64,000 nucleotides of DNA, from the IMG/VR virus record IMGVR_UViG_3300042558_003926, positions 1 through 64,000 of that record; one strand, given 5' to 3'. Below are positions 12,108 through 22,099 of this stretch, one piece after another. The notes below the pieces were generated by a model that worked only from the letters and a program-made list of their open reading frames with translations, searched no databases and was not told the origin of the DNA. Each line of letters starts with the position of its first letter. Positions within the stretch are counted from its first letter, which is position 1. The position numbers and the translations under genes are program-made.

Positions 12108-15100
12108 ATGGCAAATAAGGTAAAAATAGATTACTCTCAGTTTAGAGCATCCGGAGTCTACACCCTAGAATTTGATGCGTCCCAGAACGTAATCCTGACA
12201 TCACAGACAATACGTCTTGTTGTAGGATTTTCCAATAAGGGACCTTTCAATACACCGGTTTATATCCCAGATGTAACTACGCTAATTTCTATTTTTGGTG
12301 ACATCGATAGATCATTAGAAAATAAAGGATCTTTTTTCCAAAGATCTATATTAACATGTTTAAATGCAGGCCCAGTGTTTGCTTTAAATCTTTTAAGATT
12401 AAACGATGATACGGATTCAGCTAACCCTGATGAGGTTGATTACCAAGCATACTCACTTGACACCGAAGAGTATAATGGTGTTGTAACAAGCAGACTATAT
12501 TCATCCTACTATAATAAGGAAAGATTCTGGTTTGCTGATCCTAACTATTTCTTGGCTACACTTAGTGTTTCTGACCAGGGTAAATTGTTTAGCTTAGTTA
12601 ATCTAGGTAAATCACCTATGAGTATTATAGTTAGAAAATCTACGGATTCATCTAAGCCACTTAAGGGATATGACATATTCGCTATAGATTGGTATGGAGC
12701 TAACAATGTTCCTACTTTCATGCATCCATTTGACTACATGTCAGATTACTTTATTGATGTTATAGCAGTTTATGGAGATTGGACGAATTATCAGGCACTC
12801 TCTATAGATCCACAGTGGAGCACTTATTTTACCGAAAATGGATTTATTAAAAGCAGAATAGACAGCTTTTTATCTGAACCTGATGTTTCTATCGTTACAT
12901 CAGTAACAGGATGTATTATACCGGATTTCGTAGATCTTAATGGTGTTAATCAATATGTACAAACTCTGATTAATAATAGCACTCCATCTACTGGGTTATT
13001 CTGTGCTATAGACGAACAAGCATTTGATGATATTTGTGCTAATGGATCTAAAATAGATCTAGTCGGAAATCACCTTATCGACGAATTAACGGGAGATAGC
13101 GATTTACCTAGTCCTAGAATTAATTTCTTAAGCTACGATCAAGTTTTAGTTGCTGACTACCTATATACACAAAACGTAGTTGGAGTAACTGGAGCAACTG
13201 GATTTGTTAGTGCTACTGGTGCTACTGTTTATACATCAGGGGCAAAAGTTGGTACCTTATATACATTAACTGGAGTAACTGGTGCAACTGCAGGGGTTGT
13301 TTATCAATCTTTCGCTAATTACGACCCTAATGCTTATGATGGCGGATTACACTATCTTCAGACTTCTGGTACAGGCGGTACCGCTGGATATTTACAAACA
13401 GCTGCTCAGAAAAATGAACTTAAGACATTCTTAACTGTAACATCATCTAACGACCAGAAGTTCATTTTAGGTGTTGTATCTGGATATACCGGAGGTTTAA
13501 CTGGAGGATTGATAAATCAGTTTGCAGAGGGTGATTTAGTTAAGTTAAAAGTAACAGGAACTAAGGACGTATCTGGAGAATTAAGGATATTCTTCACCCA
13601 CCCATTAGATACCGGATTCTACCGATCACAAGGTATTACTGTAACACCGACATACAACTTAACTTCTTACAATACAGGAGCATCTGGAAGTAATCAACCT
13701 TTCTATACGGATGCTTATCAATTTGGTAATTCTGATTATGTTGATATCGTTAGCACATCTACACCTAATGGTGTAACTGGACCTAGCGCACCTCTCGGAG
13801 TTTCTAACGTATTAGTTGGATATAATGCTTCTTCTCTTTACCAGGATAACAAGTATGCTGAGATTACAGATGGCGATATCATCTGGACTAACAGTAGTGG
13901 ATCTAACGTTCAATATTTAGGGTTCGAACAAACTGTGGATAAGGATCAGTTCAATTATGTTAATACTAGAGCATTTACCAATGTTTCTTTAGCTGATACG
14001 ACAATAACAAATATAGCTGCATTCGGTACACCTTACGCATCTAACAACGTAGGTTTACCTGTAGGAACACAGAATACTGATATAGTTTCTCAGGAAGGTG
14101 CAATAAATGAATTTGTAGATTGTTCAAGAATCGACGTAACAACATTCTTGGTAACTCAAGATTCTAACGGAAACGCCCCTTTCTCGGTTGGAGATTTGGT
14201 GGTTTCAACTGACCTTGATATATGTGAGCCTTCTACCGGAAACAGACAAAATAGATTAGCTAAAATCACTACAGTTTCTGCTACAACTACTGCTGGAACT
14301 TTCAGAGTAACTTCAGCTAGACCGGTTCTTTATTATACTTCAGGATCTGGAGTTAGAGTTCAGAAATTTAAATCGATAGCTCAGTTTACAAGATCCTTTG
14401 ATTTTACATATCTGAGTGGATTCACAATGACAGACTGGCACAGACCTAATGGAAGTGATGCTAGAATATCTGAGATTCTTGATGTTATGTATAACACGAA
14501 TATTGCTAAGACATTAGCAGCTAAGGATGTTATATCTTACCGATACATCATTGATACATTCTCTGGGCAGATTTTACCAAACTCTAAATACCAGCTTTCT
14601 AGATTGGCTATGTTAAGACAACAGGCTTTGGCGATTATAAACGCTCCTTCTATGGCGCAATTTAGAGCTAGTACAGATCCAAGATTTACTGATGCTCCTA
14701 CTGCAGCTAATCCTTATCCGAGATTAAATACTGCTTATATAGCAGATGGCGGTAACTTATCTTTAAATCCGTCTTACACATTTAGCTTACCTTCAGAAGC
14801 TGATGGAGCTAAGTACGCAGCATTCTATTCTCCTTATATTACTGTAAGAGAAACTAATAGAAACGTTGAGGTACCACCTGCAGCATACGTTTCTAATAAC
14901 TTCCTTAGAAAATTCGCTAACGGAGAACCTTATGCTATTATAGCAGGTCAGAAACGTGGAGTAATTAGCGGAGGTAATATAGTAGGTGTTGAATATGACT
15001 TTACTGAAGAGGACAGAGGAAACTTAGAACCTTTCGGAATCAATCCAATCATCAAAAGAAGAGGAATTGGAGTAGTTATCTTCGGTAACCAAACTGCTTA

Positions 15101-15458
15101 TCAGCAAGTTAATTCAGCATTTAATCTTGTTCACGTTAGAGATCTATTGATTAGTGTAGAAAACGACGTTCAAGAGATCTTGGCTAACTACCTATTTGAT
15201 TTCAACGAAGATTCAATCAGACTAGAAATCAAAACATTAGTAGACAACTACCTAGATGGTGTTAGAGCTGGTGGTGGTATTTACGCTTACCAAACAATTA
15301 TGGATGCTTCTAATAATACCCCTGCAATCATAGATATGAACATGGGTATAATTGACGTCATAATAGAACCAGCAAGAGGAATCCAGAAGTTCATTAATCG
15401 AATCACGGTTACAAGAACTGGAGGAATTGCTTCTGGAGGATTCATACAATTTGTATAA
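12108..15458 (+). CDS. Contractile tail sheath protein (gp18-like) with large insertions
   Basis: SGVYTLEFD...VGFSNKGPFNTPV at the N-terminus; VPPAAYV, AGQKRG, GINPII, FGNQT, VHVRDLLI and LFDFNEDSIR at the C-terminus. Confidence 0.93.
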   Translation: MANKVKIDYSQFRASGVYTLEFDASQNVILTSQTIRLVVGFSNKGPFNTPVYIPDVTTLISIFGDIDRSLENKGSFFQRSILTCLNAGPVFALNLLRLNDDTDSANPDEVDYQAYSLDTEEYNGVVTSRLYSSYYNKERFWFADPNYFLATLSVSDQGKLFSLVNLGKSPMSIIVRKSTDSSKPLKGYDIFAIDWYGANNVPTFMHPFDYMSDYFIDVIAVYGDWTNYQALSIDPQWSTYFTENGFIKSRIDSFLSEPDVSIVTSVTGCIIPDFVDLNGVNQYVQTLINNSTPSTGLFCAIDEQAFDDICANGSKIDLVGNHLIDELTGDSDLPSPRINFLSYDQVLVADYLYTQNVVGVTGATGFVSATGATVYTSGAKVGTLYTLTGVTGATAGVVYQSFANYDPNAYDGGLHYLQTSGTGGTAGYLQTAAQKNELKTFLTVTSSNDQKFILGVVSGYTGGLTGGLINQFAEGDLVKLKVTGTKDVSGELRIFFTHPLDTGFYRSQGITVTPTYNLTSYNTGASGSNQPFYTDAYQFGNSDYVDIVSTSTPNGVTGPSAPLGVSNVLVGYNASSLYQDNKYAEITDGDIIWTNSSGSNVQYLGFEQTVDKDQFNYVNTRAFTNVSLADTTITNIAAFGTPYASNNVGLPVGTQNTDIVSQEGAINEFVDCSRIDVTTFLVTQDSNGNAPFSVGDLVVSTDLDICEPSTGNRQNRLAKITTVSATTTAGTFRVTSARPVLYYTSGSGVRVQKFKSIAQFTRSFDFTYLSGFTMTDWHRPNGSDARISEILDVMYNTNIAKTLAAKDVISYRYIIDTFSGQILPNSKYQLSRLAMLRQQALAIINAPSMAQFRASTDPRFTDAPTAANPYPRLNTAYIADGGNLSLNPSYTFSLPSEADGAKYAAFYSPYITVRETNRNVEVPPAAYVSNNFLRKFANGEPYAIIAGQKRGVISGGNIVGVEYDFTEEDRGNLEPFGINPIIKRRGIGVVIFGNQTAYQQVNSAFNLVHVRDLLISVENDVQEILANYLFDFNEDSIRLEIKTLVDNYLDGVRAGGGIYAYQTIMDASNNTPAIIDMNMGIIDVIIEPARGIQKFINRITVTRTGGIASGGFIQFV

Positions 15459-15497: not shown

Positions 15498-16052
15498 ATG
15501 GCAGGATTATCTCACTTTTCAAATTCGTTATCAGCAATAAATAGGTTTGAACCTGTTTATCTGAATCAATTCGAAGTTACTATTATACCACCAGCAGCAG
15601 TTGCCGGAGGTGAAATTTTACTTCAGCACGTATCCAAAGTAAGCGGTCTTTCTTTAGATAAGAACCCAGGACTTGCTACTCAGAAATTTAAGTTTGCTAA
15701 AAGAAATTACGCTGGAGCTAAGCCAGATCAGACATTCATGGATCTTAGTGTTAGTTTTTCTGTTAACTTGAACGATGATAACTCAATGTACGTTTTCAAA
15801 ACTCTGAGACAGTGGTCTGATTTAATTTACAATCCACTAACAGGAGCGATGGGATTAAAGAATGACTATGTAGGAACTATAGTAGTTAACATCTTTAATA
15901 AACAAGGTGATGTTTTTAGAAGGATTACTTGTAAAGATTGCTTTCTTACAAAGCCAATCTCTCCGATGAACCTAAACTATACATCAACTGACCTATACAA
16001 GATAGATGATATGGTATGGGCGGTGGACTACTGGGAGGATTTATTCCTATAA
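15498..16052 (+). CDS. Tail tube protein, paralog 1 (gp19-like)
   Basis: Follows the sheath; EPVYLNQFEV, LRQWSDLIYNPLTG..G.K.DYVG, DYWED. Confidence 0.85.
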   Translation: MAGLSHFSNSLSAINRFEPVYLNQFEVTIIPPAAVAGGEILLQHVSKVSGLSLDKNPGLATQKFKFAKRNYAGAKPDQTFMDLSVSFSVNLNDDNSMYVFKTLRQWSDLIYNPLTGAMGLKNDYVGTIVVNIFNKQGDVFRRITCKDCFLTKPISPMNLNYTSTDLYKIDDMVWAVDYWEDLFL

Positions 16053-16069
16053 AAAAAGAATTTAAATAA

Positions 16070-16645
16070 ATGGCAGGACTACCACATTTTACCAATTCAA
16101 AAGCAGCTATAAGTAACTTCGAACCGGTTTATTTAAATCAGTTTGAGGTTATAATAAATCCACCTGCTGGTATAGTAGACGCCGCTACTACCTTTAACGG
16201 TGAGGGGATATTAGCTCAACAAGTTAAATCCATAACGGGTTTAGCAGTAGATATTTCTCCTGCAGCAACAATAGAGCAGAACTATAAGTTTGCTACAAGA
16301 AGATATGCAGGGGGTGAACCATCTACCACGGATATGACTCTTTCGATGGAATTTGAGGTCAATCTTAATGATCAAAATTCCATGACTGTTTATAAAATAC
16401 TAAGACAGTGGTCGGATCTAATTTACAACCCTCTAACTGGAGCTATGGGGATTAAATCAGATTATGTTGGATCTATGGTTATTCAGGTATTTAACAAAAG
16501 AGGTGACGTTTTTAGAAGAATAAGAATACCTTCTTGCTTTTTAAGTGAAGCTATAAATGCAATGGAGTTAGATTATGAGACCCCAGCAATATATAACCTT
16601 ACTGCTAGTTGGATCTGTGATTACTGGGAAGATACCTTCTTATAA
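16070..16645 (+). CDS. Tail tube protein, paralog 2 (gp19-like)
   Basis: Shares the same blocks as 15498..16052. Confidence 0.85.
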   Translation: MAGLPHFTNSKAAISNFEPVYLNQFEVIINPPAGIVDAATTFNGEGILAQQVKSITGLAVDISPAATIEQNYKFATRRYAGGEPSTTDMTLSMEFEVNLNDQNSMTVYKILRQWSDLIYNPLTGAMGIKSDYVGSMVIQVFNKRGDVFRRIRIPSCFLSEAINAMELDYETPAIYNLTASWICDYWEDTFL

Positions 16646-16735: not shown

Positions 16736-17848
16736 ATGGAAAATGGACTATCCCCTGAGGAGATCTTAAGAATGAAAGAAATAGAAGGGGGAATTGAATA
16801 TGATGACCCGATAAGTAAAGAGCAATCTTCAGTAGTCACGATAGAAAAAGAGGCTGATCCTAAACCGGAGGAAGTCAATAAACATGATTCAAATAATACC
16901 GAGCCAAAAAAAGTACAATCACCCGATCAGAAATTAAACGTGGTAGATCTGAATCAAAGCTTAAGTAAGAATTCTTTTGGTAAGGCTCAGAGTGTTCCTG
17001 AATCACCATCCTTTGATAGTGGATGGAAGAATCTACCTGTTAATATACTACCTTCTAAAGGCATGTTCTATCCGGATAAAACAAGGATTGCAATAAGAGC
17101 TGCGGAGGTAAGAGAGATTAGACATTTTTCTACTATAGACGAGGATGATAATTTAGATATCGAGGAGAAACTTAGTTATATCTTAGATAGATGTTTTAGA
17201 ATGGAATTCCCGGGAGAGGGAGTAGTTTCATATAAGGATCTAAAACAGGAGGATAGATTCTTTGTTATTATGGCCATAAGGGATTTAACATTCGTAAGGG
17301 GTGAAAATTCTATTATACTTAAAACGAAGAAAAAATGTAAACAAACACCAGAATGTCCATTCAACGAAGGTTTGGAATTGAGAACCGGTGTTTTAAGTTC
17401 ATATGATATAAACCGAGATATCCTAAAATATTACAATCAGGAGACAAGGAGTTTTATCTTTACCGTTAAAAAAACGGGTAAAACTATAGAGATGACAGTT
17501 CCTAGTATAGGAGTTACCCAAGCCATTTCTGATTTTGTTCGAAATGAATACAAGGGGAACAACCCTGTAGACGAGGGATTTATTCAAATAGCTCCCTTCA
17601 TCTTTAATGAATGGAGAAATTTAACTCCAGACAAGATTAGAATAAAATTAAAGGAATCTGATTTCTGGACCAAAGAAGAATACAGCTTATATTTTGGTCT
17701 TTCAGAAAAAATTAAAATAGGAACCACGCTAGAGGCAAAACAGAAATGTCATATTTGCGGTGATGAGGAGGTCACCGCTGATATTACCTTTCCCGGCGGG
17801 ATCAGATCTCTTTTCCTTATTTCAGATATCTTTAGAGAACTTCTTTGA
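16736..17848 (+). CDS. Tail/baseplate-hub assembly chaperone (T4 gp26/gp51-like)
   Basis: LPSKGMFYP, Cys pairs (CKQTPEC, CHIC); sits between the tube genes and the tape-measure-like gene. Confidence 0.65.
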   Translation: MENGLSPEEILRMKEIEGGIEYDDPISKEQSSVVTIEKEADPKPEEVNKHDSNNTEPKKVQSPDQKLNVVDLNQSLSKNSFGKAQSVPESPSFDSGWKNLPVNILPSKGMFYPDKTRIAIRAAEVREIRHFSTIDEDDNLDIEEKLSYILDRCFRMEFPGEGVVSYKDLKQEDRFFVIMAIRDLTFVRGENSIILKTKKKCKQTPECPFNEGLELRTGVLSSYDINRDILKYYNQETRSFIFTVKKTGKTIEMTVPSIGVTQAISDFVRNEYKGNNPVDEGFIQIAPFIFNEWRNLTPDKIRIKLKESDFWTKEEYSLYFGLSEKIKIGTTLEAKQKCHICGDEEVTADITFPGGIRSLFLISDIFRELL

Positions 17849-18023
17849 TATTAAATTTAGACTTTGGTATGAGCATAAGCTAGATCCAAATTGGCTAGAA
17901 TCTATACCTTTCTATGAATATCAAATATGGATCGATAAACTGAACGATACCATAGAAAAAGAAAATGCTGAAGCTCAGGCTGAGGGAGGGGTTACCCAAT
18001 TATTTAGTTTTACATCTAAGTAA
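17760..18023 (+). CDS. Small tail assembly chaperone C-terminal module, probably expressed by frameshift from the upstream gene
   Basis: SLENFFDIKFRLWYEHKL...LESIPFYEYQIWI resembles the small T4-like ORF (YYxxNF...HHKY...ExMIPWER) that follows the hub chaperone. It overlaps the upstream gene in the +1 frame. Confidence 0.6.
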   Translation: MMRRSPLILPFPAGSDLFSLFQISLENFFDIKFRLWYEHKLDPNWLESIPFYEYQIWIDKLNDTIEKENAEAQAEGGVTQLFSFTSK

Positions 18024-18042: not shown

Positions 18043-19584
18043 ATGTCAGATCCTAAACTAACAGCTCAAATGTTAGATCTCAGTAGAAATATTGAGAAGC
18101 TAACAGGTGCAGTAAAAACTAATACCGAAAGCACAGATCAACTACAGAAAGCTAATTCCGATTCAGATAAGGGACTCAAGGATGTTGTTTCCAATTTGAA
18201 AGACCTAAATTTCAAAGAGATATCTAAAGAATTTAAGGACATATCCAAAAACATAAAGGATTTAGATTTTAAAAAAATAGGAGAAGATTTTAAGGGCGTA
18301 ACTAAATCTTTTGGAGATATCGGAAAAAGCATAGGCGATATAAAAAGTTTAAAAGATATACCCAAAAGCTTTGGTGATATATCTAAATCTCTAGGAGGGA
18401 TAAAGGATCTTGGTAAAGATTTTAAAGGTATAAAGGATCTGGGTAAAAACATTGGGGACGTAACCAAGGACCTCAAGGGAGTTGGTAAAATCAAGGATAT
18501 AGTATCGGGAGGCGTCGGGAAAAAAATACTAGGTGCTTTTGCTGACGGAGGTCCTGTTGATGAAACCGGCAGCTATCTTGTTGGTGAAAGGGGACCGGAG
18601 GTTGTTAAGTTAAACGAAGGTAGTAACGTTATACCTAATGAAAAGTTAGTTAGTGCAGACCAAAAACTTAGTGAAAAAAAGGGTCCTACAGAAAAGCAAA
18701 TATCTAGGTATAAAGATTATCTGCTTTGGGAGTATCCAGACCACTATGAGGAATTCCCTGAATTTCTAGAGAGTGATGTCAAGGATTGGATGGACAGTAT
18801 GAGATATCATTCTCCGGAGGTCATAGATAGTTTATTGGAGGGTAGGGGCGGAACATTTACTAAGGAGGATGTAGCTAAACTAACTTCTCCGACAAAAACA
18901 GAATTACCAGATACACTTACTGCAGAAGGTGAATTATCGAAAAAAGATAAGAGAAAAAAAGAGAAGGGAGAAGAGAGAATAGCTAAGGATAAAGCCAGAG
19001 CTGAAAAAAAAGAAGCTAACCTAGAAAAGAGTGCAGAAAGAAAGGAGAAGTTTAGCGGTCTAATAGGGAACATAAAAGAATCGGGTAAGAGTGCTTTAGA
19101 GGGTAAGAATATTTCTAAAGTTACAGGCTTAGGAGCTGGATTACTATCTAAAAATATAAAGACCGATAATCCTCTATTAAAAAAAGCAGCGGATATCGGT
19201 ATTAAAACATCTGCGGATAAATTAGGGAAATCTTTAGAAAATCCGGAACTGCTTTCCAATGTGCTCCCTCTTAAAAAAGCCCCGAATAAAAAGATGGAGA
19301 AGGAAGAAAAGAAATCGGAAATATCTGAATCCATCGAACCTAAAAAAGCAGAACAACCAAAAGCATCTACCACCGAAGCTTCTACAGTTAAGAGCGAAAC
19401 CGTAGCATCAGATAAATCGGAGTCAGCAGCAGGAAAAAGTTCAGAAAAATCCGAAACAAATCTATCAAAAGCCGATATAGATGATATGAAATCGGCATTA
19501 TTTAGAATGGTATCCCTATTGGAGGGAACATTAATGGTATCTACTATAGAATCACCATTCCGACCAAATTCAAAAAGAATCTAA
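18043..19584 (+). CDS. Tape-measure-like tail protein
   Basis: Amphipathic KD(I/L)xKx(F/I)G repeats; FADGGPV..GSYLVGERGPE motif typical of tape-measure proteins; follows the chaperone pair. Confidence 0.6.
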   Translation: MSDPKLTAQMLDLSRNIEKLTGAVKTNTESTDQLQKANSDSDKGLKDVVSNLKDLNFKEISKEFKDISKNIKDLDFKKIGEDFKGVTKSFGDIGKSIGDIKSLKDIPKSFGDISKSLGGIKDLGKDFKGIKDLGKNIGDVTKDLKGVGKIKDIVSGGVGKKILGAFADGGPVDETGSYLVGERGPEVVKLNEGSNVIPNEKLVSADQKLSEKKGPTEKQISRYKDYLLWEYPDHYEEFPEFLESDVKDWMDSMRYHSPEVIDSLLEGRGGTFTKEDVAKLTSPTKTELPDTLTAEGELSKKDKRKKEKGEERIAKDKARAEKKEANLEKSAERKEKFSGLIGNIKESGKSALEGKNISKVTGLGAGLLSKNIKTDNPLLKKAADIGIKTSADKLGKSLENPELLSNVLPLKKAPNKKMEKEEKKSEISESIEPKKAEQPKASTTEASTVKSETVASDKSESAAGKSSEKSETNLSKADIDDMKSALFRMVSLLEGTLMVSTIESPFRPNSKRI

Positions 19585-19646: not shown

Positions 19647-20213
19647 ATGCGCAAGGAAAAAGCTATTAAGGAGTTTAAGTTTAAAGATCTGTCATTTCTA
19701 GAGGATCGGTTTTTTAATAATTCTAATTGGAGGATTGTAAAATTTACAGATTCTAACGATTTATTTCACTATAGGGTATTTACTTCTGATGATTCTGACC
19801 TTATAATTGATCATAGGAGCGATAAGATATACTTAGAAATGGCGCAAACTTGGGCAAAAAATTCTTACTGCGAAAGAAAAAAAGTAGGTTGCTTGATAGT
19901 AAACAATAGAGCGGTGATTTCGGATGGATATAACGGATCACCTACTGGATTTCCTAATAGGTGTGAAATTAATGATGTAACATTACCTTACGTACTTCAC
20001 GCAGAGGCTAATGCCATAACAAAATTAGCTAGAGGAACTCAAAGTTCAGATGGGTCGGTTTTGTATGTTACTTTATCTCCTTGTTACGAATGTTCAAAAC
20101 TTATTATACAATCTGGTATAAAAAGAGTAGTTTTTAATCAGATTTACAGAAAAACTGAATCGATATCCTTTCTTGCTGAAGCTGGGATAGAGATAATAAA
20201 AATAAATATTTAA
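19647..20213 (+). CDS. dCMP deaminase
   Basis: KKVGCLIV, GYNGSP, HAEANAI, SPCYECSKLIIQSGI. Confidence 0.92.
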   Translation: MRKEKAIKEFKFKDLSFLEDRFFNNSNWRIVKFTDSNDLFHYRVFTSDDSDLIIDHRSDKIYLEMAQTWAKNSYCERKKVGCLIVNNRAVISDGYNGSPTGFPNRCEINDVTLPYVLHAEANAITKLARGTQSSDGSVLYVTLSPCYECSKLIIQSGIKRVVFNQIYRKTESISFLAEAGIEIIKINI

Positions 20214-20220
20214 TTACTGC

Positions 20221-20829
20221 ATGGAGAAAAATATACAGAAACTAGCCGAGGATTTTATGGAGACAAGATCAGATAGAGAATTTCAACCGTTATTTGACAG
20301 ACTTAGACCCGGCGTATTAAATCACTGTTTCCTTATTGTGAAGGAGAACGAATTAGCACAAGATGCTTTTATAAACACAATGGCTAAGATCTGGTTGAAG
20401 ATAGATCAATACGATAAGGAAAGAGGTAATTTTTCAACCTGGTGTTATAACATAGCAAGGAATGAATCTTTACTTTTATTGAAATCAAGAAAAAGATATT
20501 TTTCTCATAATGAATCAGAGCTAGATTTTCTGTCCTCCAAAAATTCAATCGGTGATCTGGGCGGAGTGTATCTTATGGAAGAGGATCCATGTAATTTTAT
20601 ATTTGGCGAGGAAAATAGTGTCGACGAGATATATGAGTCGGTACTCGATGAGATTAGAGATCTACCCGACCTTTATCGGGATATTATGATAGATAGGGAG
20701 ATCAATAATATGAAATATAAGGATATCGCTGAAAAGTACGGGATCAAGAAAAGATCCATAGCAACCCGTATTAGGAGGGCCAGAGGTAAAATCCGTAAAA
20801 AGATGGGCGGGAACAATAAACCCCATTAG
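20221..20829 (+). CDS. ECF-type sigma-70 family RNA polymerase sigma factor
   Basis: Region 2 AQDAFINT..KIW.KIDQYD..RGNFSTWCYNIARN; region 4 helix-turn-helix MKYKDIAEKYGIKKRSIATRIRRARGKIRK. Confidence 0.9.
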   Translation: MEKNIQKLAEDFMETRSDREFQPLFDRLRPGVLNHCFLIVKENELAQDAFINTMAKIWLKIDQYDKERGNFSTWCYNIARNESLLLLKSRKRYFSHNESELDFLSSKNSIGDLGGVYLMEEDPCNFIFGEENSVDEIYESVLDEIRDLPDLYRDIMIDREINNMKYKDIAEKYGIKKRSIATRIRRARGKIRKKMGGNNKPH

Positions 20830-20838
20830 CATATAATA
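20810..20838 (+). promoter_or_regulatory. Putative middle (ECF-type) promoter
   Basis: GGAAC-N16-ATATAATA upstream of 20850. Confidence 0.55.
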
Positions 20839-20849
20839 TAGAAAGAAGT

Positions 20850-21284
20850 ATGTTTAGGATTTTTAAAGTTATAAAGGAAATACGGCTCTACAGAGAGTAC
20901 ACCAGGATCGTAAAAAAAGAGGAGAAGGATTCTCAAATGTGGAAGAGAAGAAACTTAAGAAGAGACTATTTAAATAGGATTTATACCGTTATCAATCTCC
21001 CCTTACAGGTTCTTGCTTCTGTGGATTTACCTAGGGAATCCAGGCCTTCCTTTGTAGTACAAGAAATAAAACCAATAAACGAATATCTTAAATCCCTTAA
21101 TCTGGAAGAAATTATAACAATGTGGGTAGAGCCAGTTAAGGGGACAGACGAAGAATCATATCTGGTCGTTTATCAATTTCTTTTTAGATATATTACCTGG
21201 CTTTGGATTTTAAGGTTTATTTTGGAGATAGTCCTCATCTCCCTGGCTATTTATTATAGAGGTTTTTTATTTTCTTTCTTCTAA
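20850..21284 (+). CDS. Hypothetical protein with C-terminal transmembrane segment
   Basis: Hydrophobic C-terminus. Confidence 0.65.
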   Translation: MFRIFKVIKEIRLYREYTRIVKKEEKDSQMWKRRNLRRDYLNRIYTVINLPLQVLASVDLPRESRPSFVVQEIKPINEYLKSLNLEEIITMWVEPVKGTDEESYLVVYQFLFRYITWLWILRFILEIVLISLAIYYRGFLFSFF

Positions 21285-21295
21285 TCTAGTTTATA

Positions 21296-22099
21296 ATGTC
21301 TGAAGAGTTAATATTATTAAAGAAGAGGGAAATAGAGGAGAAGTTGAGAATCTATGAGGATTCTAACTTTACGTTTCATGAGGAGTCGCATGTTTATAGA
21401 TATTCAGGAGTAAAGTATGATTCAGTTACTACTTTTCTTAAGATATTCAAAGTTCCTTTTGATCGAGAATATTGGTCGAAAAGAAAAGCTGAGGAAAGGG
21501 GAGTGGATGTTTCCGTTATATTAAACGAATGGGAAACTAAGGGGGATGTGTCAAGAAACTTAGGGACTTTAGTCCATAAGTTCATAGAGGACTTTTGGTC
21601 GGGTGAAAATCCGGAAATTCCTGATGATGTGGATGTTAAGGATAGAGTCTTAAAATTTATGGAGGTCTATAATAAAAGACTACATAAGCTAACCCCATTA
21701 AAATCAGAGCTAAAGATATTTTCTAAAAAATGGAGGCTTGCTGGAACAATCGACCAGCCATTACTTTTATTCGATCCATCAACAGAAAGAGTACATTTAA
21801 TAATAGGAGACTGGAAAACCAACGGTGAATTTAAGGATGATAAACACCCTAAGGGGAGATTTAAAAAATTACTCAGACCTTTCAATAATCTATATGAGAA
21901 TGACCATAATGAATATTCAATTCAGATAAGTCTATATCGTCTTATATTAGAGGAGATTGGTATTGAGACCGAGAGCGGGTTCCTTCTTCATTTAGGTCCA
22001 GAGGATCCTAAGATTTACCCAGCTAAGGATCTCAGGGAACCACTAAGAGCATACCTTAATCAAAATAGAACAGAGTTTGATATTTTTAAAATAGATTAG
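21296..22099 (+). CDS. PD-(D/E)XK (RecB-like) exonuclease
   Basis: GTLVHKFIE, SELKIFS, LAGTIDQ, IGDWKT, YSIQISLY. Confidence 0.85.
   Translation: MSEELILLKKREIEEKLRIYEDSNFTFHEESHVYRYSGVKYDSVTTFLKIFKVPFDREYWSKRKAEERGVDVSVILNEWETKGDVSRNLGTLVHKFIEDFWSGENPEIPDDVDVKDRVLKFMEVYNKRLHKLTPLKSELKIFSKKWRLAGTIDQPLLLFDPSTERVHLIIGDWKTNGEFKDDKHPKGRFKKLLRPFNNLYENDHNEYSIQISLYRLILEEIGIETESGFLLHLGPEDPKIYPAKDLREPLRAYLNQNRTEFDIFKID

What the first reader, a model, noticed from the sequence alone, without database searches (positions are those of the whole stretch)
17760..18023. Probable +1 (or -2) programmed frameshift in the tail chaperone, with a prfB-like CTT-TGA site
Seen: the downstream ORF overlaps in the +1 frame, and its only candidate starts (GTG/ATG at 17760-17765) lie deep inside the upstream gene. 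The upstream gene ends AGA GAA CTT CTT TGA T (CTT TGA at 17843-17848), and a +1 slip continues directly as D-I-K-F-R. A second candidate site is CTT TTC at 17810-17815, which would retain the SLENFF segment. Known: tail chaperones between tube and tape-measure genes commonly frameshift (lambda G/GT is -1, Mu is -2), and CUU-UGA is the RF2 autoregulatory +1 site. Inference: a G/GT-like pair in a T4-like phage, possibly responsive to RF2 level.
Basis: partly seen in the sequence, partly recalled or inferred. Interest (0 to 1): 0.6.

Follow-up and report, generated by a model that had tools for sequence, protein, structure and literature searches.

The report
Frameshift in phage hub/tail chaperone gene

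Summary
ORF 16736-17848 (370 aa) is overlapped in the +1 frame by an open frame, 17733-18023. All 79 related viral contigs that carry both parts keep this offset. Of 70 distinct relatives, 22 have no ATG, GTG or TTG ahead of the conserved +1 peptide, so a separate start cannot be the conserved mechanism. Sequence variation follows 0-frame third positions up to about 17803 and +1-frame third positions from 17816 on. GATCTCTTTTC (17805-15) is invariant in the 48 sequences first aligned. The prfB-like CTT TGA and the RF2 idea are not supported.

The gene belongs to the T4 gp26/gp51 family, and the extension matches the C-terminus of gp51. T4 encodes the short and long forms as two paralogous genes. 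T4-like cyanophages reach the same extension through a -1 shift at an invariant T_TTT_TTC, which sampled GenBank records leave unannotated.

Whether the shift here is +1 or -2 cannot be settled from sequence. I found no paper describing this. It is a new variant of the known tail-chaperone frameshift.

The parts
16736..17848 (+). 0-frame gene for the short isoform (370 aa), a gp26-like hub/tail assembly chaperone. The N-terminal 92 residues are predicted disordered, residues 93-363 are folded, and there are two CxxC-type motifs.
   Evidence: ORF. phrog_36717, E 1.3e-21. The same phrog holds PAU gp93, which passes Pfam PF12322 T4_baseplate at 33.9 bits against a cutoff of 24.5. hhalign against the gp26 family gives E 1.4e-4 over 208 collinear columns. 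The AF2 model matches 'baseplate hub subunit / hub assembly protein T4-like' models in BFVD, with E down to 1e-10.
17807..17815 (+). Shift site TCT CTT TTC (0 frame S-L-F; +1 frame reads CTC TTT TCC).
   Evidence: GATCTCTTTTC (17805-15) is invariant in the 48 distinct sequences. In the 70, 69 carry TCT CTT TTC and one carries TCT TTT TTC. The same nine bases occur in the distant relatives MaF61 and LR756500. The codon-phase switch is bracketed by 17804 and 17816.
17814..18023 (+). +1-frame extension (about 70 aa, SLFQISLENFFDIKFRLW...) that forms the C-terminus of the long isoform. It is homologous to the C-terminal part of T4 gp51.
   Evidence: phrog_634, E 9.5e-5. The same phrog matches T4 gp51 residues 147-246 (E 1e-23) and the cyanophage -1 ORFs (E 1e-28). 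Alignment. There is a single copy in the 290-kb genome.
17816..17848 (+). Dual-coding overlap: the 0-frame tail LISDIFRELL* of the short isoform and the +1-frame SLFQISLENFF of the long isoform.
   Evidence: The DNA is almost invariant, and the variation that exists falls nearly all on +1-frame third positions (17816, 17825, 17834, 17840, 17843). An acidic ...ELL* end recurs in window, LR756500, PTm1 and L230.
17757..17778 (+). Possible upstream hairpin GCGGUGA/UCACCGC with GGAGG in the loop. The GGAGGU is conserved at the nucleotide level about 37 nt 5' of the site. Its role is unproven.
   Evidence: The fold of 17750-17785 gives -16.7 kcal/mol, z -5.3. Six pairs are kept across the family with 2 compensatory events, but the statistics are weak. 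GGAGGT is present at the same place in PAU, LR756500 and L221 although the preceding amino acid differs.
18043..19584 (+). Downstream tape-measure-like gene (513 aa), the presumed client.
   Evidence: Weak hits to tape-measure phrogs, E 2.5e-6 to 5.5e-4, plus its position.
15498..16645 (+). Two tandem tail-tube paralogues immediately upstream.
   Evidence: phrog_32623 and tail-tube phrogs.

Best explanation
One gene gives two proteins. Most ribosomes read 16736-17848 to the TGA and make a 370-aa gp26-like chaperone ending ...GIRSLFLISDIFRELL. A fraction change frame on the U-rich site UCU CUU UUC (17807-15) and continue in the +1 frame to 18023. This gives a long isoform of about 430 aa whose last roughly 70 residues correspond to the C-terminal extension of T4 gp51.

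Shown:
- where the frame switches;
- that the site is conserved;
- that many relatives lack a start codon;
- that the two parts are homologous to gp26 and to the gp51 C-terminus.

Inferred:
- The shift is ribosomal, because the T run has only four bases.
- The direction is either a +1 slip of the P-site tRNA on NNN_N (CUU_U here), about 50%, or a -2 tandem slip CUU UUC to CUC UUU, about 40%. The junction would read ...RSL-SLFQ... for +1 and ...RSLF-SLFQ... for -2.
- Both isoforms act as non-virion assembly chaperones for the hub and tape measure, by analogy with T4 gp26/gp51 and lambda gpG/gpGT.

The stated confidence is for a programmed frameshift at this site, not for its direction.
For: - The +1 offset is kept in all 79 loci with both parts.
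- 22 of 70 distinct relatives have no ATG/GTG/TTG in the +1 frame before the conserved LFSLFQ. The L016-type extension printed in full contains no Met at all.
- Mean column entropy by 0-frame codon position 1/2/3: 1.12/1.07/1.46 far upstream, 0.43/0.01/0.13 in the overlap after the site, and 1.27/0.69/0.44 downstream. The constrained frame therefore flips at the site.
- A double change at 17803/17804 is synonymous in frame 0 but changes S to Y in +1. The C/G change at 17816 is synonymous in +1 but changes L to V in frame 0.
- Site conservation across clades is shown.
- T4 gp26 and gp51 are both PF12322, with BLASTP E 2e-6. The gp51 C-terminus and the extension fall in the same phrog.
- 37 distinct cyanophage/pelagiphage gp26 genes end with an invariant T_TTT_TTC followed by the homologous extension in the -1 frame. 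The base before the run stays T although the residue varies between S, A and D.
- This genome has only one copy of the gene and one of the extension, so the long form has no other source.
- For +1: clade L230-L233 has GTC AAA AGT TTA TTC, where only AAA_A re-pairs. L007-L009 have UUU_U.
- For -2: CUC UUU re-pairs perfectly, the preceding UCU is invariant, and the cyanophages show a backward UUC to UUU slip.
Against: - There is no protein or ribosome-profiling evidence.
- The metatranscriptome contigs do not cover the site.
- The window itself has GTG 17760 and ATG 17763, so an extra independently started 86-87-aa product cannot be excluded here. PAU has GGAGGT-N5-ATG in the +1 frame.
- No convincing downstream stimulatory structure was found.
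- No single slippery pattern fits all +1-offset clades, so the tRNA events are unresolved.
- The profile link to gp26 is moderate (hhalign probability 53%), though the fold search supports it.
Confidence: 0.85

Rival explanations
1. prfB-like +1 frameshift at CTT TGA (17843-48), stimulated by slow RF2 termination.
For: The sequence CTT TGA T is present, and 52 of 70 family members keep CTTTGAT.
Against: That conservation is already required by the +1 codons TTC TTT GAT (F-F-D). The +1 coding signature and the gp51-profile match begin about 30 nt upstream. There is no SD-like element 3 nt upstream. The family also has TTT TGA, ATT TGA and TAA stops, and PAU, LR756500, MaF61 and L230 end in TAA.
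Confidence: 0.03
2. Two independent overlapping genes, with the 87-aa ORF translated from GTG 17760 or ATG 17763 (or reinitiation) and no frameshift.
For: Start codons exist in the window and in 48 of 70 relatives. PAU has a good SD plus ATG. GenBank annotators call small separate 'gp51' ORFs.
Against: 22 of 70 relatives, plus LR756500, MaF61, Syn19 and Mosig, have no start before the conserved peptide. The GTG at -86 is a by-product of the 0-frame C-G-D/E codons. Upstream of 17804 the substitutions respect frame 0 and change the +1 residues. T4 gp51 carries the extension fused in one frame.
Confidence: 0.08
3. Transcriptional slippage (RNA polymerase stuttering) rather than ribosomal slippage produces the frame change.
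For: The site is a T run. The cyanophage version has six Ts.
Against: The window has only four Ts, and clade L230 has no T run at the homologous place. As far as I recall, known slippage sites need longer runs of about 7 or more. The RNA contigs showed no indels but did not cover the site.
Confidence: 0.04

Closest known systems
T4 gp26 / gp51 (baseplate hub assembly chaperones, Pfam PF12322 T4_baseplate)
   Same: The upstream ORF has the same fold and family. The extension is homologous to the gp51 C-terminus. In both systems a short and a long form share a common domain.
   Different: T4 encodes the two forms as separate, divergently transcribed paralogues. Here one gene plus a frameshift gives both. 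This protein also has an extra disordered N-terminus of about 90 aa and sits between the tube and tape-measure genes.
Lambda gpG/gpGT-type tail assembly chaperone frameshift (Xu, Hendrix, Duda 2004; cited in PMC9024508)
   Same: The gene lies between the tube and tape-measure genes. The second ORF has no start of its own. The slippery site is conserved near the 3' end. The result is a short and a long isoform. The best PDB fold match for residues 94-189 is the HK97 tail assembly chaperone, although it is weak (Z 5.5).
   Different: There is no sequence match to the Pfam tail-chaperone families. The offset is +1/-2 rather than the usual -1. The overlap is long (at least 62 nt) and dual-coding. 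The protein is about three times larger than gpG.
Cyanophage/pelagiphage (Kyanoviridae) gp26 with the small 'gp51' ORF
   Same: Both the gene and the extension are homologous, and the junction lies within about 2 codons of the same place.
   Different: These phages use a -1 shift at T_TTT_TTC with the 0-frame stop one codon later. It is not annotated as a joined CDS in the GenBank records sampled.
prfB (RF2) autoregulatory +1 site
   Same: A CUU codon followed by U, with CUU to UUU re-pairing possible.
   Different: There is no stop codon in the A site at the real shift site, no SD at 3-nt spacing, and no conserved link to UGA.

Membership tests
T4 gp26/gp51 family (PF12322 T4_baseplate) | Sequence match to the family profile | tested here: inconclusive
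   The window protein alone has no Pfam hit at E<=0.1. Its phrog-mate PAU gp93 passes the cutoff. Profile-profile comparison gives E 1.4e-4, probability 53%.
T4 gp26/gp51 family (PF12322 T4_baseplate) | Shared fold with annotated hub assembly proteins | tested here: met
   The BFVD Foldseek search gave 51 hits at E<=1e-3. Many of them are named baseplate hub subunit or hub assembly protein T4-like.
T4 gp26/gp51 family (PF12322 T4_baseplate) | gp51-type C-terminal extension collinear with the domain end | tested here: met
   phrog_634 matches the extension and T4 gp51 residues 147-246. Alignment.
T4 gp26/gp51 family (PF12322 T4_baseplate) | Required for hub assembly and absent from the virion | not testable with these tools
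   Needs genetics and virion proteomics.
gpG/gpGT-type tail assembly chaperone frameshift | Position between the tube and tape-measure genes | tested here: met
gpG/gpGT-type tail assembly chaperone frameshift | Second ORF lacks its own start and the slippery site is conserved | tested here: met
gpG/gpGT-type tail assembly chaperone frameshift | Homology to known TAC families | tested here: not met
   There are no Pfam TAC hits. The only link is a weak fold match to HK97 TAC, Z 5.5.
gpG/gpGT-type tail assembly chaperone frameshift | Both products made in a fixed ratio | not testable with these tools
   Needs expression and mass spectrometry.
prfB-like +1 site | Shift at CUU followed by an in-frame UGA, conserved in relatives | tested here: not met
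prfB-like +1 site | SD-like element about 3 nt upstream of CUU | tested here: not met
   The upstream sequence is AGAGAA. The nearest G-rich motif (GGCGGG here, GGAGGG in most relatives) lies 9 nt before CTT 17810.

The most novel reading that the evidence does not exclude
The gp26/gp51 hub chaperones are the T4-lineage counterpart of gpG/gpGT. Different lineages reach the long form in three ways: two paralogous genes (T4), a -1 shift at U_UUU_UUC (cyanophages and pelagiphages), and a +1 or rare -2 shift at UCU_CUU_UUC (freshwater jumbo phages). The last operates in hosts that seem not to use Shine-Dalgarno initiation, and may be helped by a conserved upstream GGAGGU hairpin.
Probability: 0.4. 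Interest if true: 0.75.

Novelty: new variant of a known kind. Interest (0 to 1): 0.6.

Why it matters
- It points to a chaperone frameshift in the T4 lineage, where I found none described or annotated. It also offers an explanation for why T4 carries two paralogous hub 'catalyst' genes.
- It would correct the annotation of cyanophage genomes. 355 GenBank records match the Syn19 junction region, and every record I inspected either has a truncated 'gp51' ORF or leaves the extension unannotated.
- It offers a natural series of -1 and +1/-2 sites at nearly the same codon for studying what sets frameshift direction. That series includes a host group (probably Bacteroidota) whose ribosomes hide the anti-SD.

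Tried and rejected
- Nucleotide search of the phage collection with the region found nothing.
- The downstream stimulatory structure is not supported. Folds of 17816-17880 and 17816-17920 are no better than shuffles (z 0.4 and 0.2). The RNAalifold stems lie in invariant DNA and show no covariation.
- The outer part of the upstream hairpin is specific to the window.
- Metatranscriptome contigs from 4 lake runs show pieces of the tube gene and of this gene but do not span the site. They say nothing about RNA-level indels.
- There is no tRNA gene in the window.
- There are no PDB sequence relatives and no significant PDB Foldseek match.
- PF12322 was not detected by the six-frame genome search, whose controls also stayed silent.
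- The four-letter-codon translation (CTTT=L) re-shifts at a later CTT T, so no fused product was built or folded.
- Literature searches for a gp26/gp51 frameshift found nothing relevant. Subscription papers are not covered.
- Scans with the PAU, PTm1, MaF61 and L221 proteins returned almost only the query phage itself.

Full report
**1. Observation**

The window is the first 64 kb of a 289,651-bp IMG/VR virus record. Near-identical DNA occurs in at least 14 lake-water metagenome runs.

The gene order is:
- large terminase
- 1116-aa sheath
- two tube paralogues
- a 370-aa ORF, 16736-17848
- a +1-frame ORF, open from 17733 to 18023
- a tape-measure-like ORF, 18043-19584

**2. The arrangement is conserved and the second ORF has no start of its own**

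tblastn with the 87-aa ORF hit PAU, PTm1, MaF61, LR756500, Syn19 and Pelagibacter phage Mosig. In each annotated record inspected, and by my own ORF analysis of the unannotated LR756500, the match straddles the end of the upstream gene and a small or unannotated ORF.

Eighty IMG/VR loci with 52-100% protein identity were fetched. All 79 that contain both parts keep the +1 offset.

In the 70 distinct sequences, 22 have no ATG, GTG or TTG in the +1 frame before the conserved LFSLFQ. The L016-type extension printed in full contains no Met at all.

The genome has one copy of the gene and one of the extension.

**3. Where the frame changes**

Column-by-column counts show the following:
- Up to about 17803, variation sits on 0-frame third positions.
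- GATCTCTTTTC (17805-15) is invariant in the 48 sequences.
- From 17816 on, variation falls nearly all on +1-frame third positions.
- Mean entropy by 0-frame codon position 1/2/3 goes from 1.12/1.07/1.46 far upstream, to 0.43/0.01/0.13 in the overlap after the site, to 1.27/0.69/0.44 downstream.

A paired change at 17803/04 is silent in frame 0 but changes S to Y in +1. The C/G change at 17816 is silent in +1 but changes L to V in frame 0.

The switch therefore lies in TCT CTT TTC. The same nine bases are present in MaF61 and LR756500, which are only about 35-45% identical to the window over the extension (site DNA).

The CTT TGA is explained by the +1 codons TTC TTT GAT, and it is not kept outside the family.

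**4. What the gene is**

- The 370-aa ORF and PAU gp93 share phrog_36717, and PAU gp93 passes PF12322.
- hhalign of the family against gp26 proteins is collinear over 208 columns and ends GGIRSLF ~ EGLASFF (E 1.4e-4).
- An AF2 model (pLDDT 75; residues 93-363 confident) matches many 'baseplate hub / hub assembly' models.
- T4 gp26 and gp51 are paralogues and are divergently transcribed.
- The C-terminal part of gp51 (residues 147-246) falls in the same phrog_634 as the window extension and the cyanophage ORFs.
- No solved structure of the family exists.
- The best PDB fold match, for residues 94-189, is the HK97 tail assembly chaperone at Z 5.5. This is a lead only.

**5. Relatives use other routes**

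In 37 distinct cyanophage and pelagiphage loci, gp26 ends ...FFx* with an invariant T_TTT_TTC, and the extension follows in the -1 frame. The base before the run is always T although the residue varies. The GenBank records I inspected carry no joined CDS.

**6. Direction and stimulators**

- A -2 tandem slip (CUU UUC to CUC UUU) re-pairs perfectly in the TCT CTT TTC clades, and it mirrors the backward UUC to UUU slip of the cyanophages.
- PAU has TAT CTT TTC. PTm1 and L221 have ATT TTC. L007-L009 have TTT TTC. Clade L230-L233 has GTC AAA AGT TTA TTC.
- These are better unified by a +1 slip on NNN_N.
- I leave the direction open, at about 50% for +1 and 40% for -2.

On stimulators, a GCGGUG/CACCGC hairpin presenting GGAGG lies about 37 nt upstream of the site, and there is a G-rich motif 9 nt upstream. 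Both are conserved at synonymous positions, but their function is untested.

Genes in the window lack SD sequences. Only 3 of 57 have one, against a background rate of 15%. This suggests a Bacteroidota-like host and makes the role of an SD-like element uncertain.

**7. Novelty**

No paper in the searchable library describes a gp26/gp51 frameshift. This is a new variant of the known tail-chaperone frameshift. Its favoured site and the RF2 link do not.

Noticed in passing
L003:4011-4019; L085:2987-2995; L088-L140: T4-like cyanophage and pelagiphage gp26 genes carry an invariant T_TTT_TTC heptamer one codon before the stop. The 'gp51' extension follows in the -1 frame. In the GenBank records I inspected it is either unannotated or truncated to a late ATG.
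   Followed up: partly
L087:7803-9229 (T4 genes 26 and 51): T4 gp26 and gp51 are paralogues (both PF12322). gp51 is a gp26-like domain plus the C-terminal extension, so T4 encodes the short and long forms as two divergent genes.
   Followed up: partly
L007-L009 (e.g. L008:4072-4080): A natural variant has TCT TTT TTC (six Ts) at the site but keeps the +1 offset. It therefore carries a classic -1 heptamer that would lead into a frame closed after about 7 codons.
   Followed up: no
L230-L233 (about 36 nt before the 0-frame stop): This clade has the same +1 arrangement but no T run (GTC AAA AGT TTA TTC). Only AAA_A offers re-pairing.
   Followed up: partly
window 15498-16052 and 16070-16645: Two tandem tail-tube paralogues (184 and 191 aa, phrog_32623) lie upstream of the chaperone gene. 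The sheath at 12108-15458 is unusually long at 1116 aa.
   Followed up: no
window 19647-22099: A dCMP deaminase, an ECF-type sigma factor and a weak PD-(D/E)XK nuclease hit lie directly after the tape-measure-like gene, inside the structural block.
   Followed up: partly
whole window: Start codons are preceded by A/T-rich leaders with almost no SD motifs (3 of 57 against a 15% background). GGAGGT occurs 32 times on the + strand and 5 times on the - strand.
   Followed up: no
L001:4004-4024 (PAU): PAU has GGAGGT-N5-ATG in the +1 frame just upstream of its site. In that phage the extension might also be started independently.
   Followed up: no
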